A stretch of 64,000 nucleotides of DNA from Takakia lepidozioides. Its lineage: Eukaryota; Plantae; Bryophyta. The stretch spans positions 51,336,001 through 51,400,000 of the forward strand of contig CM060731.1 of the NCBI GenBank assembly GCA_030704615.1, given 5' to 3'. Positions 17,801 to 61,627 of this stretch are shown piece by piece (positions within the stretch are counted from its first letter, which is position 1; the number at the start of each line of letters is the position of its first letter). The notes below the pieces were generated by a model. It was not told the origin of the DNA. It did not search any database and worked only from the letters and a program-made list of their open reading frames with translations. The position numbers and the translations under genes are program-made.

Positions 17801-18545
17801 AATTAAACATTACATAAAATTTTAACTCATGAGTTTATAATTCTAGAGTCATCGTAGCCAGGTCATCGTAGACACGTCATCGTCGTCGTCAATTTCTTTG
17901 GAATCTGCCTGGAATGCCCGAAAAAACCAAAAATGACTTCTTGAGCTCAAGCTCAAGTGCGGTGTTTGATGGACTAAACGGGGGTAAGTAGCACCTTCAC
18001 CATTTGTATGGGGCTCTCCAGCTTAGAGAATCTCTTGATGTTGAATTAGATTTGTGGGCTTTTGATTGTTGACAGTGGGTTCACAAGGAAGCAACTATGC
18101 TGCCCTTAACGGTTGTCTTCAGAAGCTCTAGGTTTTCCATGGAATTTCCCAGGTTGTACATTCGCTGTATTGAATGAATGCGTCGTCGGATCTAGGCTCG
18201 GAATTGTGTTGTGCAATTCAGTGGGCGAAGAAGCAAGAAAGCGCATGCGATCGTAGGCAATGCCGATAACTGTTATGTCTGGCATGTAGGTCAACGCTGG
18301 AGCATGGAACAGCGTTGACAGGATTGTCACACCTGATCATTGTCACAGACCACTCCAGAATCTCCAGTCTACAGACATAAGCTGAGTTTTCAACCATCTA
18401 CCCATGTAGGTTTATTGTAGCTATTGATCCACATGGAATCATAGGTCATCTGGAGCTTGAAGTCCGCCCTCTTGGATGAACCTGTCCACTCACACACTAT
18501 CCCTGCTCCTTCAGCTATCCATGCCTCTGCACAAATCATACATAC

Positions 18546-18653
18546 ATCCTTGCCTTGCTTTTCTTTCAACCATGGAGGATTCAACCGACCATCCACCCAA
18601 AGGACCTCTTGTGTGTGCTGCTTGTGTTTGTAGTCAGGTGGTCTTGGATTGGT
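18546..18653 (-). pseudogene. Orphan exon encoding the second half of an OSB-type PDF motif
   Basis: After a cacAG acceptor it reads TNPRPPDYKHKQHTQEVLWVDGRLNPPWLKEK, paralogous to exon 54704-54523. Confidence 0.8.
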
Positions 18654-30700: not shown

Positions 30701-31499
30701 AAAAACTTGATGTAAGTACTGCATACCAAATATGAATGCACACACGCACACAAACACACCATCAAACCATACACCAGCTACCCAACCAAACAATGCAAGG
30801 CCTAGATTTCAAATTCCTTGCTGTACTTTTCTCACACAAGCAGGTGGCTTGCGTCCAAGGGGAAGGTGGTGGGGGAGAGGAAAGCTTTACTTCTCAATGC
30901 GGGCAGCCAATATATCTGCTGCCAGAAGCCGCTCTCGTGCTGTCCTACGCCTTCGCTTTCCTTGTGCTGGAGGCAACAGCTGCACAGAGCCTTGATTGGC
31001 CTTTAAGCTCTCAATGATGAAATAATGAGAGTAGATTCAGAAGTCCAGACATGCCTCCTTACAACGCTTGTTTTGAAACACATGTACAGACCAGTAAGGT
31101 ACCAACCAATGAGACTTGCGATAGTATTTCAATGTGGACCACAATTACCTGCCCTCCCTTGGTGAGAAGCTCACAGTTGAAGCAAATCCAATCGCCCTCC
31201 GGAACCTCAGTCAGGGGTGGTTCCAAGCAGCTGAGATGATACCCACCCAGGCAATCATTACACTCGATCATCACCTCCTTCCCAGTCTCACCGCATATCC
31301 TGCAATCTTCCATTTCTTCATCAGACTCGGATCCCATGCCTTCATCTTGAGACCCACCTGAGCTCAAGTGTTCCTTCCTTCCTTTGCGAACATACACGTC
31401 ATCGCCGACATTGAATTCAACGTCTCGAAATTCCACCCGTTTGAAGAACCGCCTTTGTTGTGCATCGTGCGCACCTTTTCTTCCTCTAGATTTCCTCAT
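24735..31499 (-). CDS. ORC1: Origin recognition complex subunit 1 (BAH-PHD-AAA+-WH), multi-exon
   Basis: BAH ([15 protein letters not shown]), PHD ([24 protein letters not shown]), Walker A GVPGTGKT, Walker [22 protein letters not shown], and C-terminal [14 protein letters not shown]. Start codon inferred. Confidence 0.95.
26790..26860 (+). mobile_element. 71-bp 3' fragment of a tail-less LINE in an ORC1 intron
   Basis: Matches the 3' end of 42285-43505; 17-bp TSD tctatctgctattgatc at 26773-26789 and 26861-26877. Confidence 0.92.
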
Positions 31500-32199
31500 C
31501 TTATCTCTCTTCCTCACAAAACTCCGACCCCTACCATTTGAGCATGTCCGGCCCACCACCTTCAATAGTCCTGCTCGTCATCTACGAGTGCGCCTGTAAA
31601 CAGCAAACAGAGAAAGAAAGAAAAAGATCTATTACCTCAGCGGGTAGAACATCAAAGAACCACACACAATAAAACAGTGGACCCGGCAGAAACCGAATAA
31701 CTACACCAACATAAGAAAGAAGGAAGCAGCACAGGAGAAGAAAGAGAGAAAAAAGAGAAGGCATACGAAAGAAACTTGGAGACACACGCACAGAGAGACT
31801 GACCCAGTTGAGAAGTGGGATTCGGGAAGAGAAGTCCCTGAGAAAAATAGGGAAGGAGCGCAGGGGAGCAAATCTCCCTCTCCGAACAGTGAAGAGCGGG
31901 AACTCTGAGTGGTCAAAACTATAAACTTAACCCTGCTGACTTCGAATACGACAAACTGGATGCAAGAGGAATTTGTCTGGCAAACAAATTGAAGTAATCA
32001 ACGCGGGTGGGTCCAGAGTCCAGAGTCCAACCCCATCCCTCAACCCGGATGGTACATAGCCTGACAGCATCACCATCGATTGTATTGGTACGTGCAAGGC
32101 AAACACTAAGTTAAACACCCTGCAAAACACGAAGATTGCTAGAGTTATAGCATGGCATTCAAAGACTCGAAATTCGGCCATTCCAGTGGCGCCCAGATT

Positions 32200-51369: not shown

Positions 51370-51662
51370 GAGTACAGAAGCCTCCTGTGCCCTGCTCACA
51401 CCCCATGCATGTCATTTCTGTGGTAAACACAGGGCTATAAAACTAAAATCAATAACCCTGCAACCACTGACCAGACTGTCAAGTTTGCATGTGGACAAGT
51501 GCCTCTGTGAGTGCCTTAATGGCAGTTGCGGGAAAATAAGTTTATACCTGCAGCTGAGTTACAGGGATAAGCTAAACCATGGTGACGCAAACCCCACAAA
51601 AGGCTCCGGGGTGGTTAGTTTTCTGTGGGGTCAATGGCCGTAAGGCTATGGCGAGCCAATGT
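51370..51662 (+). mobile_element. Diverged relative of the tail-less LINE 3' end
   Basis: ggggtcaatggccgtaaggctatggc resembles ggggtcaatggccacaaggctacggc of the young family. Confidence 0.5.
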
Positions 51663-51749
51663 TCACAGGGAGCGGCATGAATACATTCTTTCCTCAGCCA
51701 GATGGCTTCCACTCTCACATTTGAAGCAACAAGCTCTTTTCATACATGT

Positions 51750-52321
51750 ACTCCCACCAGAACAAATCATTTTGGAGGTGGTAAAGTGGTGCTTGACATC
51801 CCTTGGAACAACTGCTGCCCATAATCTTTGAGATGAACTTGGTGGTGTGGCAGTTACCACAGAAATAAGGTTCTCACGAATAGACCTCCCAGGGGCATGC
51901 TGATGAGTCGCAAAGCAAGGGCTAGCTTCACAGTGCGGTGGAAAGGAGGAAATTAGCTGCGCTTGTCCTCCAAATCATGCAATACAAAGCCAGTGTCAGG
52001 CACATACCCAGCATCCTTCACCTGCTCAGACAATCTCTCAGACTTCCAACTCCTTGGAAATGTAGGGAAGGTCTACTATTAGGTGTCGATGCTAGTTCCA
52101 CGTGAAACTTTAATAGAATGGTTTTCTTCAATCTATGGCTGAAATTTGTGTTCCACAATGGAGGTATGCAGTATGCACCCAGTTGTCCACACCAATGCAG
52201 CTGCATGGCGCGACCATTCTGACACCTGTCCTCCATCAGTTTTCTTGCCTTCTGGCTTTTTTGTCCCACAATAGGTCGCAGCTTATATGTTCGATTGCAG
52301 CATGTAAGCCACACCCTGCTG
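51750..52321 (-). pseudogene. Decayed E2/DYW domain of the PPR gene
   Basis: Remnants AYMLQSNI*AA, CSCIGVDNWVHT, MKDAGYVPDTGFVLHDLE, HRTVKLALA and CGNCHTTKFISKI, with stops and frameshifts. Confidence 0.85.
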
Positions 52322-55300
52322 TTAATCAGTCTCGAGGATTCTTTTAGCCACACGCTCTGCTCGCTGCACATCGTCATGATTTCTGCAGGCACCAAGCAAG
52401 GCCCCCCACAGGGAAGCATCTGGCTTGATTGACAATTTGCTAATGAAGTCCTCTGCCTCATCCAATCGCCCTGCACGGCCAAGGAGGTCCACCATGCAGC
52501 CAAAATGCTCCACCGTAGGAGTGAGGCCATGATCTTGGCTCATGGAATTAAAGTAGTGACGGCCTTCATCCACTAGGCCCACATGACTACATGCAGAGAG
52601 AAGACCTACAAAGGTGATACCATCGGGCTTCAAGCCTTCCTGTTGCATTTGTTCAAACAATTGGATGGCCTCCGGAGCACACCCATGCTGAGCATACCCT
52701 GCTATCATTGCACTCCATGAGACCACATCTCGTTGATCCATGTTGTTGAACACGTGACGTGCTTCCTTCATGCTTCCGCATTTGGCATACATTTCAACGA
52801 GGGCGGTATCCAGGATGACATCTGGCTGAATTCCAGCTTTGACGATATCACTATGGACCTCTTTTCCCTTGTCCAGGGCTGACAGGCTGGCACACGCACA
52901 GAGAACACAAATGAAGGTGACCTTATCAGGCATCAACCCTTCTCGTTGCATTCGTGCATAGATCTCCAAAGCCTCACTACCAAACCCATGCTGAGCATAT
53001 CCTGTTATGATCGCACTCCACGAGACCACATCTTGTTGAGCCATACAGTCAAACACTTGACGCGCATCCTTCATGCTTCCACATTTGGCATACATTTCGA
53101 CAAGGGCAGTCTCCAGCACAAGATCTGGCACAATTTTGGCTTGGATGATGTCAGCATGGACCTCTTTGCCCTTTTCCAGGTCCCCCAGGCTCGCACACGC
53201 ATTCAGAACACAAATAAATGTGACCCTATCAGGCATCACCCCTCTCCGTTGCATTTCCACATAGGTCTCAAAAGCCTCCCCAGCGCACCCATCCTGAGCA
53301 TATCCTGCTATCATTGCACTCCAAGTAACCACATCTTGTTGAGCCATGCTACGAAACACTTGACGCGCATCCTTCATGCTTCTGCATTTCGCATACATGT
53401 CAGCAAGGGCAGTATCCAGAATGATGTCTCCTGTAATTCCAGCTTTGATGATGTCAGCATGGACCTCTTTGCCCTTTTCCAGGGCTCCTAGGCTGGCACA
53501 TGAATTGAGAATGCAAATGAATGTGACCTTGTCGGGCATCATCCCTTCCTGTTTCATTTGCTCATACATCCCAAAAGCCTCCTTAGAACAGCCATGTTGA
53601 CCATATCCTGCGATCATGACATTCCATGAGACCACATCTCGTGTTGCAATATTGTTGAACACTTGGCGTGCATCGTTTACACTGCCACATTTTGCATACA
53701 TGTCCACAAGGGTGTTCTCTAAAATGATATCTGGCACAATTCCACTTTTGCTGATGTCTGCATGGACTCTTTTGCCCCTTTCCACAGATCCTAGGCTGGC
53801 ACAAGCATTTAGAACGCAAGTGAAAGTGACCATGTTAGGCATCACCCCCTCCTGTATCATTTTCTCATAGATCTCAAAAGCGTCCATACCACATCCATGC
53901 TTGTTATATCCTGCCATCATTATAGTACATGTGAACACATCTCGTTCTGGCATTTTGTCAAACACTTGGCGGGCATCCACCACCTTCCCACACTTGGTGT
54001 ACATGTTGACAAGGGTGTTGAGTAGAAAGTTGTTTGGCTTGAATCCAGTTTGGATGATGTGAGCATGCACTTGCTTTCCCGATCCCAAGTCTTTAAACTT
54101 GATGCACTCCTGCAGGAGAGAGACATAAGTATTGGAGTCTGCCGAAATGCCTTGTTGGTGCAAAATATGCAGTGCCTCTTTTACTTTTCCTGCCTTACAG
54201 AGTGTCCTCACATTCCCACATATACCAGACGAGGTTTCATTGACCGTTTCTCTTGGTCCCCTTTCAAAAGAAGGGATCATCGTGGAGGTGCTTGATTCAA
54301 ATGACTCTGCCACATTCATCCTGCATAACTCCAAACTCCTAGTTACAACTTTACACTAAATCTTCATAATCTATTGGAATCTTGTAGATACTTCTTAAAG
54401 AGGACAGGCTCCTTAGTCAAATCAACTGGGTGACAAAACTTCTGTAGCCATCCACTCAGGAAACAAACTGCACCAGTTCTACTTATTTGACTTGGAACCG
54501 TATATCATTGTCAGAATGTTACCTATTGTACTGTCGGTGTGGAACTCCATGCTGTGCATGAAGACTGAAACCACCACCAGATTGTGGTTGACCTTCTATC
54601 ACAGCAGCTAGCTTTGCTTTCACCCAAGGCGGGTTTGACCAACCCTCAATCCAAAGGACCTCCTTTGTGTGCTTGTGCCTGAAGTCTGGTGACCTTGGAC
54701 CTTTCTGTGTGACACCAGTGGGCAGCTAAGCAGCAGCTTCACAGATTTGCAGAAACCAGGATTCTCCACCAAAACTCCAAGCATTGATCAAATGTTGAAC
54801 AACTCCTAGCAACAATTAGAACAATTTTGCTTCTTTTTGCCCTTTAAGAGCCAAATTTTGACATCTATGCTACTGGAGATGTATGAGTCCACCAGCATCA
54901 TCATACCAGTTGCTCCGGCAAGGTCGTAAATGAAAATAACTTCACCTTATCAAACCTGTTGTCCCACCACTGTGAAGGATCCAAAAAGAACTCCTGCCAG
55001 AGCTGTTCTGTGTTCAATGCCTGACCTGCATGCAGAAAGTGCAAGAATATGAGAGGTTTGACCGGAGCCTCCATAGAGGTGTGATAGTAGTGTAATGAAC
55101 ATAGGTCTTTAGCACCTCTTGGCCTGTATTGTAATAGTTTTGGCTTCCCATTAAGTAACCTCTCTCTCGGTCTTCCGGTGATGCTTGATGTACTCTGAAG
55201 TAGTTCATGATTTGCTCTACCTTGTCCTATGGGCCCTCCTGGACTAATTTAAAGTCTCTCTCTCAAATATAACATTTTTTCTTTTACAGTCTTCTCTCCC

Positions 55301-55646
55301 ACAAAATCCAGCGAGATTATCTATTTACGGACATCCAATCCACCCCAGCCACATCCGTCACATCATCTGCATTGAGAAACTACACGCCTCCAAGGAAATT
55401 CTTCCAGGAGTCGCAGAAATTTTCGTGTTCCCAAAATTACGTACCTTTCTTGGCTACCATTTCAGACTGGGGAAGCATAGCTCGCAAGGGTCGGGGATCC
55501 AGCATGCCCAAGCTGGTCAGCTCTACAGTCTGGCCGGCTACTCTGCTGCATGATGCGAGGCGTCCCGGCCATCCACCGTAAGGAAAAGCCCTCGCCCACA
55601 TGGCCTCTCCCTGCGCACTCCGCAGAAGCGGCGGAGCCGCTGCCAT
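52322..55646 (-). CDS. PDF-motif / PLS-PPR fusion protein (~820 aa): leader, OSB-type PDF motif, 17 PLS repeats, truncated E1
   Basis: Exons 55646-55445, 55025-54946, 54704-54523 and 54320-52322 are joined by GT-AG introns in phases 1, 0 and 2 with no stops. The PPR exon is unambiguous; the splice model is inferred. Confidence 0.85.
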
Positions 55647-56291
55647 CCCTCCGTGCGCATGTGAGAGGCCAAGAGGCAGCGTAATAGAAACACCACACAA
55701 GCAGGCGCTCACTCCCTCTCGTAATAAACAGGGTGATAACTAACAATCATCGCACTTCGATCATCTGACTCAAGTTCAGCTTCGATAATCCAGCAGCAAC
55801 TTTGTTGCTCAAAATTGCTGAGGATGCTCATGTTGTCAGACTTGGTGATCAATCATCGTAGTTCCTGCGATCACATCTCGTTTGTGCATTTTCTCGTGCG
55901 CTTGGCGACCCAACTTCGGATGCATCCCACAGCCTCCAGCTCTTGTGGGGAACATCTGACTGGAATCTAGGTTTTCAAGCTCGTGATTCAGTGATTCAAA
56001 CTGGGCAGCGAGGAAACCTTCGCAGCAGCCATCCAGACGGAAAAATCACTGTTGCAGGCGATGAATACCAGGGCCATCCAGCTGACCTGGGGTTCAAATC
56101 TTGGAGGTGTAGCCTTTTGGGCTTGTGGGCTCCTGTGATGAATCTAACGCAACCACGCCTCGAGATGTCCGCTCCGAAGAAAGAAGAAGAGGAGACACAA
56201 AGGGGAGGACGAGAGAAGGACAACTCAAACGGGGTGGGAGGAGAGGAGAAGATCAACAAGTGCGTGAGCGATAGCAGGCACATTGCATTGG

Positions 56292-59200
56292 ATGGCAAGC
56301 ATGGCAGCTGCCACGGTTGGCAGAATTTCGACAGCCATGGAGTCGGCAACTAAATCCTTGTCTCATCCCTCGGTCTCCGCTTCGTCTTCGGTTCCGGTGT
56401 TCCTGCGTCCCTCGCTCTCCCATTCTAAGCTCTCACAGGTGTTGATTTCTAACAGTAGGCTCTTTCATAGTCAGGAGCAATGGCGAGGCTCGTCGAAGGG
56501 CGTGCGGAGGCATCAGCGGGGAGTAGTACACATGAGCGTGAGTGTGGGGACCGATACGGTGACAAGCGATACTCTGTTCGCAGATTACAAGGCCACTACA
56601 GCGTTTCTCTTCCCAGGCCAGGTATCCCTCGCATTTCAAAATTGAACTGGAGATCGTCGTGTGCCTGACGTATGCTGGAGAAAAATAACAGTTCATTGAA
56701 GTCAATACTGTATAGTTCTGCGGTTCCGAGAAACTCTTTCTCATTGGCTTCCAGTACGCATGTTAATTAATTACAGTCATCAGCTTTCTAGACCTCGGCC
56801 ATCGTGAATAGATGCAGCATTCTGAGCACAATGGGTACATCCTTTGAGCCAAGAGCAGCTACATATTAGCTAGCAATCGTTCAGGTAACATGTCTGCTTA
56901 TAGTTTAGCCTGAGATGTCGCATAGATATAACGAAATGTTTCGCTCTTAATATTATTTGCATCTTGTCCGAGCTCGTCCGGTGATGGAGGTTCACGTCAA
57001 TTCATTGGGCTGCAGGGAGCTCAAGCTGTGGGGATGGGAAAAGATGCACACACAGTGCCAGCTGCAGCTGCTCTGTATGCACAAGCTAATGAAATCCTTG
57101 GGTAAGCCATTGTTTACACCAAACACACCAGTTCCAAAATTTCCTTCAACTGTTTTGGAGGCAAAAGCTGTGATTTTGTTTTGTAGGTCGAAGTAGAGAC
57201 TTCTAGATGTGATGGCTGAAAGGCCTGGCTCCATACTCTGTATCTACAGGCAGGCGGAATTAGCTTAGACAAGGGGAAGTAGATGAAATCCCAAGTCACA
57301 ACTACTAATATGTACTTTCCCGTTTGCCTTACTTTGTGACCAGATGAATTTGCCTGTGTATGATTGTGAGCAGGTATGATTTGTTGGATGTGTCCATCAA
57401 CGGACCAAAGGAGAAGCTGGATTCTACAGTTGTGAGTCAGGTATGAGCACTCTTTCTTGTTCAAAGGGCACTACCCATAAGGTCATATATATGTCATGTA
57501 TTCAGTAATTTGCGTTGTCTTTGCAGCCAGCAATTTATGTGGCAAGCCTGGCAGCAGTGGAGGCGTTGAGAGCTCAGGAGAGGGGGCAGGCCATCATTGA
57601 CTCAGTGGATGTCACTTGCGGCCTCAGTTTGGGCGAGTACACAGCGCTTGCTTTTGCTGGAGCTTTCAGGTCAGCCTTTGTCTTCATTAGGACAGTTTCA
57701 TGGTGAAATGCAGGATAAAAATGCTCCCTTCCATGACATGAAACCCACCAGTGTCTCACAAGTTTTCTGCAAATTCCTACTGTGACATGAGTTAAAATTG
57801 GGAACGCTTTTGATCCACCACCAGATGTAATCACCACCAAGCCAGAAAGTCTGCTCAGAGAGGTTCTCCGAAAGTTCCATTTACAGAAAAACCATTTCTT
57901 GAAAAGACACCTTCCTTGTCATCAGAGACATCTGCATCATCATGTCTTTTCACTCTACTGTGTTTACCACGTCCCTCACGAGGGTCTTGGGCAACTTCAG
58001 AGAGTTTCACACTCTACGGATTGCGACAGGGGGATGGACTAAGATGCCTGTGGGGATGGCATCTGCCCAACTTGTACCACTCATGAAGTGGAGACAGCAC
58101 ATCATTTCTTCCTCTTGTGCCATACCTAGTGCAAGATCCTATGAAGATGCTGACATCTTTCTAAAGCAGCAGAAGCCTTCAGCTATGAGAACTCAAAAGT
58201 ACCAAGGGGCTTATCTTCATGAGGCACTGTGTCTAAATGCTGGTTGGGTTTGAGTGGTTCTTTGTTTTCAATTTTCTTCTGTGTTCGATGTGGCCCTCTG
58301 TGGATTTTATGAATTTTTTCTCCTGTTTTTTTCCGAAAAGTGAGGTCTTATGGGAATATGATATGCACATGCATCTGCCTTTTGAAATCCATCTTCTGCA
58401 TTGAAATCCAAGTTATGCGCAGACTTTCAAAGACATAGACTGGTGTTATTTGCAGCTTTGAAGATGGGCTCAAGCTTGTCAAGATAAGAGGTGAAGCCAT
58501 GCAGGTATGCACAGAAGTGTGCCACACTCTTATGCTTTTAGGGGTCTTCTTATTCATTTCCTGTATAGATTCTACTGGTTGCAATGACTGAGGGTCTATA
58601 TGCAATCTTTCTCTGTTTGTACTTAACTTTAGTACTGAGAGGGTCTTTGTTCTGTTACCTGGTAAAGGTTCCCACTTTTCCCAGGCCCACTGGAGAGTGC
58701 TGCCAAAAAGAGATGTTGCACTAATTGTAGTGTGCAGTCTTCTATTTATGTCCGAAAGAACCAGAGAAGATTTTATCCCTGCTCCAGCAAGTTGTCAGCA
58801 GTTCTAGAAACATTTTTGTCTGCCTCCTACTATCATATCTGTACCTGGATGTCTGGAGTACTACTGTTAAGATGGCGTACTTTGAGTGGAATTGTAGGCA
58901 GCAGCAGATGCGGCTCCTAGTGCAATGGTGAGTGTGATTGGACTGGACTCTGAGAAGGTGGCTGCCCTCTGCGAGGCCGCCAATGCTGAAGTCAGTGTGG
59001 AAGAGAGAGTGCAGATCGCCAATTTCCTCTGCCCGGTATGTATTGCTCCCCGACACCCCTTTACTAGTGTGCATCAAGTCTGACTCTCCTCTCATTAATG
59101 TCCCCTGGTTTGGGAATAGTCAAATTAGACATCTTTCCAGAGCTGGAGTCGACCCCTGGAACAAGCCTTCAATGCTGGAAGTGAACCCTTCTTTTTTCCT

Positions 59201-60434
59201 GTGCATGCAATTGGGCGTGTGCATGAAGCTGAGAGTGTAACTTCTTTCAGACTCATGTAGGTTGCTCTAAGCTTGATCTTACCTCAGATAAATTTAGCTG
59301 ATTTTCCTCTAGTTGTGTGGAAGAGTTACTTATTTTGTGGTCAGAATGGATGGTCCCTGAGCTGCAGCATGAAGTTACCACTGAACATGTAATCAACCTT
59401 GGAAGTGGGGTAATGTAGTCGAGATGTGCATGACTTACTTATGTAGAACAGATATTGACCACATTGGAACTGGCATAATCTTGCAGGGCAACTATGCAGT
59501 GTCAGGTGGTGTCAAAGGAGTGGAGGCAGTTGAAGCAAAGGCTAAGAGTTTTAAGGCACGCATGACGGTAAGTCCCTTGATTCTCTGCAATGTGGCCTAT
59601 ATATGGAATAGCAACTGATTTCTTTGAGTGCAATTTGAAAGAAGAATTGGGTTGGTGTGAGACTTGGGGAGCATTAGCTTAGGTTTGGCTGTAGAATCCA
59701 ACGTCCCTTACTTTGCCTTGGTCAGTTGGTGATAATAGAGTTGTACGTCCTATCATTACCAGAGGTGGAGGTGGGCTCTTTGCAGGTCCGGCTGGCAGTA
59801 GCGGGTGCCTTCCATACACGGTTCATGGGCCCAGCTGTGCAGAAACTGGAAGCTGCTTTGGCTGCCACACAGTTAAAGATTCCAAGAATTCCAGTTATTT
59901 CCAATGTGGATGCCCAACCACACTCGGATCCAGCAGCCATCAAGAAAATTTTGGCACAACAGGTAGGACATATTGCCAAACTGATGTCTGTCCTTCATCT
60001 TTCTCCCAGCTGTGTGGTAGTACTAAGGAGCCTGGAAAACTGTGTTTAATTCCAGGTGACATCTCCTGTGCAATGGGAAACCACTCTACAAATCTTGCTG
60101 GGCAAGGGATTGCAAGGCAGCTACGAGCTTGGACCTGGCAAGGTACTGAAGGCTGCTTCCTTGACTACTCTGTTGTGAATTCACGCGCATCCAGTTATGC
60201 CGAATGTTTATGTGACATACATTTTTCTCTTTTCCTAGCCCCCATGTGGAGCTGCATGATGTCTTCTTTTGGCTTCTTTGGCTTGATGATGTCTGTTAAG
60301 GATAGTCTTGTGTCATTCTGTGTACATTCTGCTAGATAGTAGATCTAACCCAAGTTATCTCTCTGCAGGTAATTGCTGGCATTGTAAAGAGAATTGACAA
60401 GAAAGCAGCTGCTGTAGAGAATATAAGTGTTTAG
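56292..60434 (+). CDS. MCAT: Plastid malonyl-CoA:ACP transacylase (FabD-like)
   Basis: Eleven exons; Ser-rich transit peptide, FLFPGQGAQ, catalytic GLSLGEY, ANFLCPGN, LAVAGAFHT, SPVQWE, ELGPGKV and ENISV*. Confidence 0.96.
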
Positions 60435-61627
60435 GTGACCTGGTGCTATTGAGTTACAGTGAGCCCACAAGGTTTCCACATAACTTCCTTGTTACCCAAC
60501 AACAGATGTGGGAAACGGTGACTAGACCAAGTTTTGGCAGAAATTTTGTATTTGTTCAGTGCTTGTCCAAGCAACTCCATTTTGCTATCTGCCTAGTTGG
60601 AGTGGCCAACAACAAATGGATAGATGGCTTGCTCCTGTTATACATTACATTTGAAACTCTTGTAGTGGTATGTTTTGTACCTGTTGGAGAGTAAGATAGC
60701 CTCCTCCATTTACGTTCAGCAGGCTATGAGGAATCTGACTGACATAAGTTAGGCAACAAACTAGAGGCCACAAGCCGATGTCGTGAAGTCTTTTTTATTC
60801 TTCATATTGTGTTGTTGCTGCAGGACATTCACTAGTGTTCTTAATCTTGGCTAGTAATAAGAAACTCCCACCCTCCGAGGCTAAAAATGTCTTTAGTTGT
60901 CAATGCCATTTGAATAATTAAATAATGAGAGGACGGCAATTTGATGGGTTTTTCCAACCAAACCCCCTCTTCCACATTGTATACCAATAGAAAATCATAA
61001 CTGAAGGGCATATCTTCACGGTAAGCTATATAGTAAATAATGCCATTGCAAATAGCTCACTAATGATTGTGTTTGATAGTGTAGCACTAGTGGAATGGGA
61101 CATCTTCAAATAGTAAATGTGAAAATCCTATTTCTCTGTAGCATTCTATGGGCTTGAAACCAAAAAAATCTCATAAGATATTGTTTTTGGTCCACTTTCA
61201 TATAAATGCCCAATACATGTTTTCTTGCAATTTTTCAAACTTGATGAACCCCTCTTGTGATGATAGTGGAGGGATGAGGTATTAGAGGCAATGTAGGGAA
61301 TTCCATAAAGGCCTTGATGTGAAATGCAGCGCAATTCACTTGATTAGATGCCAATTCAATTGAACTAACCCTAATTTGCAATTCAATTGAATTGTAATCT
61401 ATAATTTTTAACGCAGTTTTGTATATAATATATATAATATATTATCATGTATATGTATATGTATATGTATCGTATACACATATACATACGAGAGTATAAG
61501 CTGAATATACATGTTGGCCCGTCTATTCCTGCTGCTTGTCCATCCTTTGCTTGTGGTAAGGCCTAAGTCACGACATGAGTCGCGTAGCCTAAAGGAGAGA
61601 TATATATACTACACATATATACTAGTA

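What the first reader, a model, noticed from the sequence alone, without database searches (positions are those of the whole stretch)
52322..55646. Hidden fusion of an OSB-type PDF ssDNA-binding motif to a PLS-class PPR array
Seen: three upstream exons splice in frame (phases 1, 0, 2) onto the PPR exon. They give MAAAPPLLRS..., then EQLWQEFFLDPSQWWDNRFDK|KGPRSPDFRHKHTKEVLWIEGWSNPPWVKAKL, a linker and 17 PLS repeats. Established: LW..FF..P..WWDNR..K..P..PDF.HK.T...LW is the PDF motif of plant organellar ssDNA-binding proteins (OSB1/PTAC9 family), where it follows an SSB-like domain; PLS-PPRs are sequence-specific organellar RNA binders and editing factors. Inference: this protein could couple organellar ssDNA (nucleoid, transcription bubble, R-loop) to a specific transcript, for example for co-transcriptional editing or RNA-anchored DNA targeting. 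I know of no functional description of this architecture but cannot check databases.
Basis: partly seen in the sequence, partly recalled or inferred. Interest (0 to 1): 0.92.

Follow-up and report, generated by a model that had tools for sequence, protein, structure and literature searches.

The report
Truncated PPR editor carrying OSB module
This expressed plant gene joins a small single-strand-binding 'PDF' module, captured exon by exon from organellar DNA-binding OSB genes, to an organellar RNA-reading PPR protein; the combination is ancient, widespread in seedless plants and in no paper I could search, but this copy has lost its RNA-editing enzyme domain.

Summary
Four GT-AG exons join in frame (820 aa): a presequence-like N-terminus, one PDF motif split over exons 2-3, and 17 PLS repeats. 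A profile built only from OSB-named proteins matches both PDF exons. The phase-1 and phase-0 introns at the motif sit at the same places in OSB genes from liverworts to angiosperms, so the module was captured from an OSB gene. RNA contigs show the exon 2-3 splice (many paralogs) and imply the locus-specific exon 3-4 splice; the exon 1-2 splice was not seen.

The frame stops at the end of E1, followed by a transcribed E2/E+/DYW remnant with about 10 lesions, while exons 2-4 have none: a deaminase-less derivative of an editing factor, probably still selected. And the fusion is not a one-off: it occurs in moss, liverwort, lycophyte and fern proteins (28 of 120 PPR homologs, 0 of 35 gymnosperm ones). 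This scan already holds 618 notes with the words PDF and PPR, and those shown are other loci of this genome.

Likeliest role (inferred): a non-specific single-strand clamp that helps the PPR array load on organellar RNA. A DNA tether is possible but untested.

The parts
55445..55646 (-).
   Evidence: Frame and donor; composition like homolog N-termini but no sequence match; an RNA contig covers 55863-55467 but may be the neighbour's 5' UTR
54946..55025 (-). Exon 2: first half of the PDF motif (helix and WWDNR)
   Evidence: OSB-only HMM 31.2 bits; phase-1 acceptor and phase-0 donor as in OSB genes; joint in RNA contigs
54523..54704 (-). Exon 3: second half of the PDF motif (54704-54609) and linker; phase-2 donor inside an Arg codon
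   Evidence: OSB-only HMM 35.7 bits; phase-2 Arg intron at the matching place in a Sphagnum relative; contig arithmetic
52322..54320 (-). Exon 4 coding part: linker, degenerate repeat, 17 PLS repeats (54136-52418), most of E1, TAA stop
   Evidence: locus-specific RNA contigs at 54319-54125 and 53088-52707; repeat-versus-repeat dN/dS 0.28-0.49
51745..52321 (-). Decayed E2/E+/DYW remnant, transcribed but untranslated; about 10 stops and frameshifts counting the terminal stop; catalytic Glu of HxE lost
   Evidence: contigs over 51531-52404 with 0-3 mismatches in both runs
18396..18653 (-). Second, orphan PDF second-half exon (18653-18546) followed by a degenerate half motif; probably a relic of a paralog
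   Evidence: OSB-only HMM 26.4 bits

Best explanation
A transcribed, spliced nuclear gene of a seed-free land plant, descended from a PDF-PLS-E1-E2-DYW organellar RNA-editing factor. SHOWN: the PDF module came from an OSB gene as its two PDF exons (shared introns); the fusion is shared by mosses, liverworts, lycophytes and ferns; this copy ends in E1 and its deaminase region has decayed while the PDF and PPR exons stayed intact. INFERRED: the protein is imported into mitochondria or plastids. The 17 repeats read about 17 nt of one transcript. The Trp/Lys/Arg-rich PDF fold, sitting at the N-terminal (RNA 5') end of the array, grips single-stranded nucleic acid without sequence preference and so raises affinity or keeps the target unpaired: an aid in cis for a job that seed plants may give to separate MORF proteins. 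Without a DYW domain this copy acts as a non-catalytic site-specific binder (stabilising or remodelling RNA) or as a specificity factor that borrows a deaminase in trans.
For: Profile match. Atlas fold match to an OSB cluster, TM 0.89. Identical intron sites in OSB genes of Marchantia, Calypogeia, Adiantum, Camelina and Elaeis and in PDF-PPR genes of Sphagnum and Calypogeia. All 111 long proteins found with the PDF region carry PPR domains. Spacing from the last PDF to the first YxKC repeat motif is near constant, 91-93 aa in moss and liverwort and about 100 in Diphasiastrum. PDF columns are at least as conserved as the adjacent PPR, 0.81 versus 0.72 (inflated by how the set was found). 41 of 126 PDF-PPRs end in DYW and 38 of these keep HxE..CxxC. 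PDF in 0 of 35 Ginkgo and Cryptomeria PPRs versus 23 of 42 named seed-free ones; MORF is restricted to seed plants (PMC13386178). Lesions: about 10 in 579 nt versus 0 in 2257 nt, where 27-39 would be expected at the same density.
Against: No binding or localisation data; the only biochemistry cited is ssDNA binding by the OSB1 PDF motif (PMC6963530). Moss PPR56 edits in E. coli with only 14 residues upstream of its repeats (PMC10482289), so an N-terminal module is not generally needed. Absence in gymnosperms rests on two species and on gene models that may miss 5' exons. The linker here is 35-45 aa longer than in most homologs. In angiosperms, borrowing a deaminase is described for E and E+ proteins (PMC11897456), and this one lacks E2. 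The exon 1 splice is not shown.
Confidence: 0.5

Rival explanations
1. One reading: the PDF binds organellar ssDNA (nucleoid, transcription bubble, R-loop) and tethers the PPR near nascent RNA, or both parts bind ssDNA.
For: The PDF motif of AtOSB1 suffices for ssDNA binding (PMC6963530). OSB1 is proposed to restrain R-loops (PMC8330923). Designer PPRs bind ssDNA with the RNA code (PMC12733224). The invariant residues are those of OSB. Some Diphasiastrum members keep 2-3 PDF copies, like OSB2/3.
Against: No data on location or substrate. Most members have one copy and all lack the OB fold; a single small motif is likely a weak tether (inference). The constant short spacing to the array suggests action on the strand that the PPR holds.
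Confidence: 0.22
2. This copy is a transcribed pseudogene or a relaxed by-product of birth-and-death evolution; the intact 5' part comes from recent recombination with a live paralog or from ascertainment among hundreds of copies.
For: Broken deaminase. PPR and PDF debris elsewhere in the window. 85 of 126 PDF-PPR homologs lack a DYW end and stop at variable places. Transcription could be driven by the head-to-head housekeeping gene. Repeat-versus-repeat dN/dS reflects old selection, not current selection.
Against: Zero lesions in 2257 nt against about 10 in the adjacent 579 nt. Leaving out the stop that defines the border and allowing for about 600 paralogs still leaves p of roughly 0.04 to 4e-4 (6 to 9 lesions; hand calculation). 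Splice sites are intact, and locus-specific contigs have similar depth, 11-12, over three parts.
Confidence: 0.2
3. The PDF is a structural cap or protein-contact module, or a passenger captured along with an OSB promoter and presequence, with no role in binding nucleic acid.
For: In moss and liverwort members the last PDF helix runs almost directly into the first repeat, and the two-part model is confident (pLDDT 91.6, pTM 0.76). The motif is lost or halved in some relatives.
Against: The Trp, Lys, Arg and His residues stay conserved across liverwort, moss and lycophyte. The motif may have been recruited more than once (AU p 0.022), which a passenger would not predict.
Confidence: 0.1

Closest known systems
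PLS-class PPR editing factors of seed-free plants (DYW:PG type, e.g. Physcomitrium PPR56)
   Same: PLS triplets ending P2-L2-S2, E1, and remnants of E2, E+ and DYW in the usual order; code residues (TD, SD, ND, TN) at positions 5 and last.
   Different: N-terminal PDF motif on separate exons; the frame ends in E1, so there is no deaminase.
OSB1-4 / PTAC9 organellar ssDNA-binding proteins
   Same: PDF motif by profile, fold and two intron positions.
   Different: No SSB-like OB fold; the PDF is N-terminal to a PPR array instead of C-terminal to the OB fold; one copy.
C-terminally truncated E/E+ PPRs that recruit DYW1, DYW2, MEF8 or PCW1 in trans
   Same: Site-reading PLS array without its own deaminase.
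   Different: Cut earlier (E2 absent), with the old DYW still visible as a decayed 3' UTR; the trans partners are described in angiosperms only (PMC11897456).
PPR fusions with accessory editing domains (RRM-PPR, MORF-RRM/ORRM1, RanBP2-PPR; PMC13386178)
   Same: An auxiliary nucleic-acid-binding or chaperone domain fused to a PPR protein.
   Different: Those fusions are few and mostly P-class; PDF-PLS is a large family, and that 364-genome survey does not mention OSB or PDF in its main text.

Membership tests
PLS-class PPR | Tandem P, L, S motifs ending in P2-L2-S2 | tested here: met
   17 repeats parsed; Pfam
PLS-class PPR | Organellar targeting peptide | tested here: inconclusive
   Composition only; no predictor available; exon 1 splice not seen
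PLS-class PPR | Sequence-specific RNA binding | not testable with these tools
   Code residues present; organellar genome not at hand
DYW-subgroup editing factor | In-frame E1-E2-DYW extension | tested here: not met
   TAA at 52324-52322 ends the frame in E1
DYW-subgroup editing factor | HxE(x)nCxxC zinc site with catalytic Glu | tested here: not met
   The remnant has Val for Glu and is out of frame; CxxC kept
E-subgroup PPR | Complete E1 and E2 motifs | tested here: not met
   About 30 aa of E1, no translated E2
OSB family | PDF motif | tested here: met
   OSB-only HMM 31.2 and 35.7 bits; shared introns
OSB family | N-terminal SSB-like OB-fold domain | tested here: not met
   No Pfam hit in exons 1-3; only 67 aa precede exon 2
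OSB family | ssDNA binding | not testable with these tools
   Needs EMSA
PDF-PLS-PPR family of seed-free plants (unnamed) | PDF motif directly N-terminal to a PLS array | tested here: met
PDF-PLS-PPR family of seed-free plants (unnamed) | Phase-1 and phase-0 OSB-type introns at the motif | tested here: met
   Same as in Sphagnum and Calypogeia members; the Adiantum member is intronless

The most novel reading that the evidence does not exclude
The family uses the OSB module to dock on organellar ssDNA (bubbles or R-loops), so that its PPR-DYW members edit co-transcriptionally at the nucleoid or even deaminate the exposed DNA strand, and deaminase-less members such as this one act as sequence-specific RNA-DNA couplers.
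Probability: 0.15. Interest if true: 0.9.

Novelty: new variant of a known kind. Interest (0 to 1): 0.58.

Why it matters
PLS-PPR editing factors are classified only by their repeats and C-terminal domains, and the N-terminus is usually cut off in functional work. A conserved OSB-derived module on a large share of them in mosses, liverworts, lycophytes and ferns has apparently been missed: it has no Pfam model, no solved structure, and its short exons are often dropped by gene callers. It offers a testable answer to how seed-free plants edit many sites without MORF proteins, and a direct test of whether organellar editing is tied to the nucleoid. It could also serve as a small affinity module for designer PPR editors. 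This particular locus is a poor experimental entry point because it lacks the deaminase; intact paralogs are better.

Tried and rejected
Searches were done exon by exon by reference. The joined model was translated once to check the frame and was left out of all searches, folds and trees.

Pfam has no model for exons 1-3. No PDB sequence match to the PDF profile, no fold match (best Z 2.8), and no BFVD match.

An alternative exon-1 donor at 55467 with acceptor 55020 was considered because one contig ends there. It is disfavoured because it would be phase 0 where homologs are phase 1, but it is not excluded; the contig may instead be the neighbour's 5' UTR. No exon-1 frame matches homolog N-termini.

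The PPR tree did not place this gene firmly (no starred set), so the organism stays unidentified; a moss such as Takakia is a guess from the Sphagnum-like third intron and the family size. A single origin of all PDF-PPR fusions was weakly rejected (AU p 0.022, only 64 columns).

Ten literature searches gave no description; the original OSB1 paper could not be read. Genomic loci of two Diphasiastrum members were not on record. Target prediction was not attempted without the organellar genomes.

Full report
1. Observation. Exon 4 parses as a linker, one degenerate repeat, 17 PLS repeats ending P2-L2-S2 and about 30 residues of E1 (Pfam PPR_2 E 1.7e-93).

2. The motif is the OSB PDF motif. A profile of PDF arrays from PPR homologs retrieves proteins named OSB1 to OSB4 from many seed plants. 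In the reverse test, an HMM built only from 27 motifs of OSB-named seed-plant proteins scores exon 2 at 31.2 bits and exon 3 at 35.7 bits, against maxima of 11.4 and 6.8 in 2000 shuffles. The predicted fold of the motif (helix, two short strands, helix; pLDDT 85.7) has no solved relative. In the Atlas, the same region matches an OSB cluster at TM 0.89 and two clusters of phage hypothetical proteins at 0.73 and 0.68.

3. Origin by exon capture. I mapped introns in genomic loci of homologs. OSB genes of Marchantia, Calypogeia, Adiantum, Camelina and oil palm have a phase-1 intron upstream of each PDF motif and a phase-0 intron in its middle, just after WWDNR and three more residues. PDF-PPR genes of Sphagnum and Calypogeia have the same two introns, and so does this locus. 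The third intron, phase 2 inside an Arg codon after a roughly 60-codon exon, recurs in a Sphagnum relative.

4. Expression. Two public runs (RNA by guess; contigs only) hold the locus. The two bins that lie wholly in introns have zero depth. The joint 54946/54704 appears in 13 and 5 contigs; dozens of diverged contigs pile on both PDF exons, so many paralogs with the same intron are expressed. Locus-specific contigs with 0-3 mismatches cover 55863-55467, 54319-54125, 53088-52707 and 52404-51531. The one starting at 54319 has 139 further 5' letters, and the depth of the bin holding the end of exon 3 is exactly what that contig would give if those letters are the end of exon 3 (2.04 = 12.3 x 31/187). 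I take the PDF-exon-to-PPR-exon splice as strongly implied, though the joint was not among the printed rows. The exon 1-2 splice was not seen. The contig over exon 1 stops 22 nt short of the donor and could be the 5' UTR of the head-to-head malonyl-CoA:ACP transacylase gene.

5. After the stop, E2, E+ and DYW remnants run to about 51745. Frameshift-aware alignment to five intact homologs gives 10-12 lesions: stops at 52324, 52285 and 51955 in nearly all alignments, and frameshifts near 52270-52220, 52150, 52046, 51898, 51866, 51816 and 51760; the catalytic Glu is replaced. Exons 2-4 carry none in 2257 nt, where 27-39 would be expected at that density. Allowing for the border-defining stop and some 600 paralogs, this is still unlikely by chance, so the truncated protein was probably kept by selection after the deaminase was lost; recombination with a live paralog is the alternative. 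Internal repeat units show dN/dS 0.28-0.49, which speaks only for past selection.

6. Family. Among the 120 best homologs of exon 4, 28 carry an N-terminal PDF: Diphasiastrum 19/33, Sphagnum 2/2, Calypogeia 1/2, Adiantum 1/4, Ceratopteris 0/1, unnamed 5/43, Ginkgo 0/22, Cryptomeria 0/13. All 111 long proteins found with the PDF region alone have PPR domains, and the named ones are moss, liverwort or lycophyte (biased by the Sphagnum query). Members have one to three PDF copies; 41 of 126 end in DYW. 1320 cluster representatives match the profile at E 0.001 or better; the top-ranked ones are mostly multi-PDF proteins without PPR repeats. In a motif tree, the moss, liverwort and lycophyte PPR-linked PDFs form one supported clade (95/95) apart from OSB, while an Adiantum member and an unnamed one fall elsewhere (AU p 0.022 against one clade; few columns): one old fusion and perhaps further independent ones. 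The scan's index holds 618 notes with the words PDF and PPR, and the eight shown are other loci of this genome whose follow-ups reached the same family reading; I treated them as leads and tested the claims above myself.

7. Mechanism. Established knowledge: PLS arrays read RNA one base per repeat with the N-terminus at the 5' side; the AtOSB1 PDF motif alone binds ssDNA (PMC6963530); designer PPRs also bind ssDNA (PMC12733224); MORF proteins exist only in seed plants (PMC13386178). The last PDF sits at a nearly fixed distance from the array (91-93 aa to the first YxKC in moss and liverwort, about 100 in Diphasiastrum; about 136 here), and in moss and liverwort members its last helix abuts the first repeat. 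I therefore think it most likely (0.5) that it grips the same single strand just upstream of the PPR site, as an affinity or unfolding aid in cis. A nucleoid or R-loop tether (0.22), a relaxed pseudogene (0.2) and a structural cap or passenger (0.1) are the rivals; the pseudogene reading concerns this copy only and overlaps with the others. For this copy, editing in cis is excluded; it would be a non-catalytic binder or borrow a deaminase.

8. Comparison and novelty. It works like a truncated PLS-class editing specificity factor. It fails membership of the DYW and E subgroups and of the OSB family (no OB fold). Ten full-text searches found no description of PDF-PPR proteins, and a 364-genome survey of editing-factor fusions and a 2024 PPR review do not mention OSB or PDF; the library lacks most subscription papers and the original OSB1 paper. 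Verdict: real feature, new variant of a known kind, interest 0.58. The family is the interesting thing; this locus is a truncated member of it.

Noticed in passing
window 56290-60435 (+): Multi-exon malonyl-CoA:ACP transacylase (FabD-type, named from its motifs) gene, head-to-head with the PPR gene; its transcript contig starts at 55837 and overlaps the contig over exon 1 by 27 nt, suggesting a shared bidirectional promoter.
   Followed up: partly
window 18653-18396 (-): Orphan second-half PDF exon with intact splice signals plus a degenerate second half-motif; no first-half exon found nearby.
   Followed up: partly
window 2811-1860 and 9352-8996 (-): Broken PLS-PPR fragments with similar repeats, without PDF exons or DYW; debris of paralogs.
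   Followed up: partly
P0104 residues 46-108, Atlas rows 5, 7, 8: The PDF fold resembles two clusters of phage (Uroviricota) hypothetical proteins (TM 0.73, 0.68) and, weakly, a bacterial Rad52/22-family cluster (0.43): a possible phage origin of the motif.
   Followed up: no
P0339, P0340, P0341, P0342, P0343: Proteins with 9-13 PDF-like stretches and no convincing Pfam domain, one from Kingdonia uniflora; P0372 joins three PDFs to a kinesin domain (may be a gene-model artefact).
   Followed up: partly
L006 1001-3664 (Adiantum P0101) and P0355: Intronless fern PDF-PPR and an unnamed three-PDF PLS protein whose PDFs group away from the moss/lycophyte clade: candidates for independent fusions.
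   Followed up: partly
L009 1787-1977 (Sphagnum troendelagicum): A relative with the same exon-3 boundaries but no recognisable first-half PDF exon; the motif appears half lost.
   Followed up: partly
window 31062-31565 (-): ORF with a PHD finger (Pfam E 3e-10).
   Followed up: no
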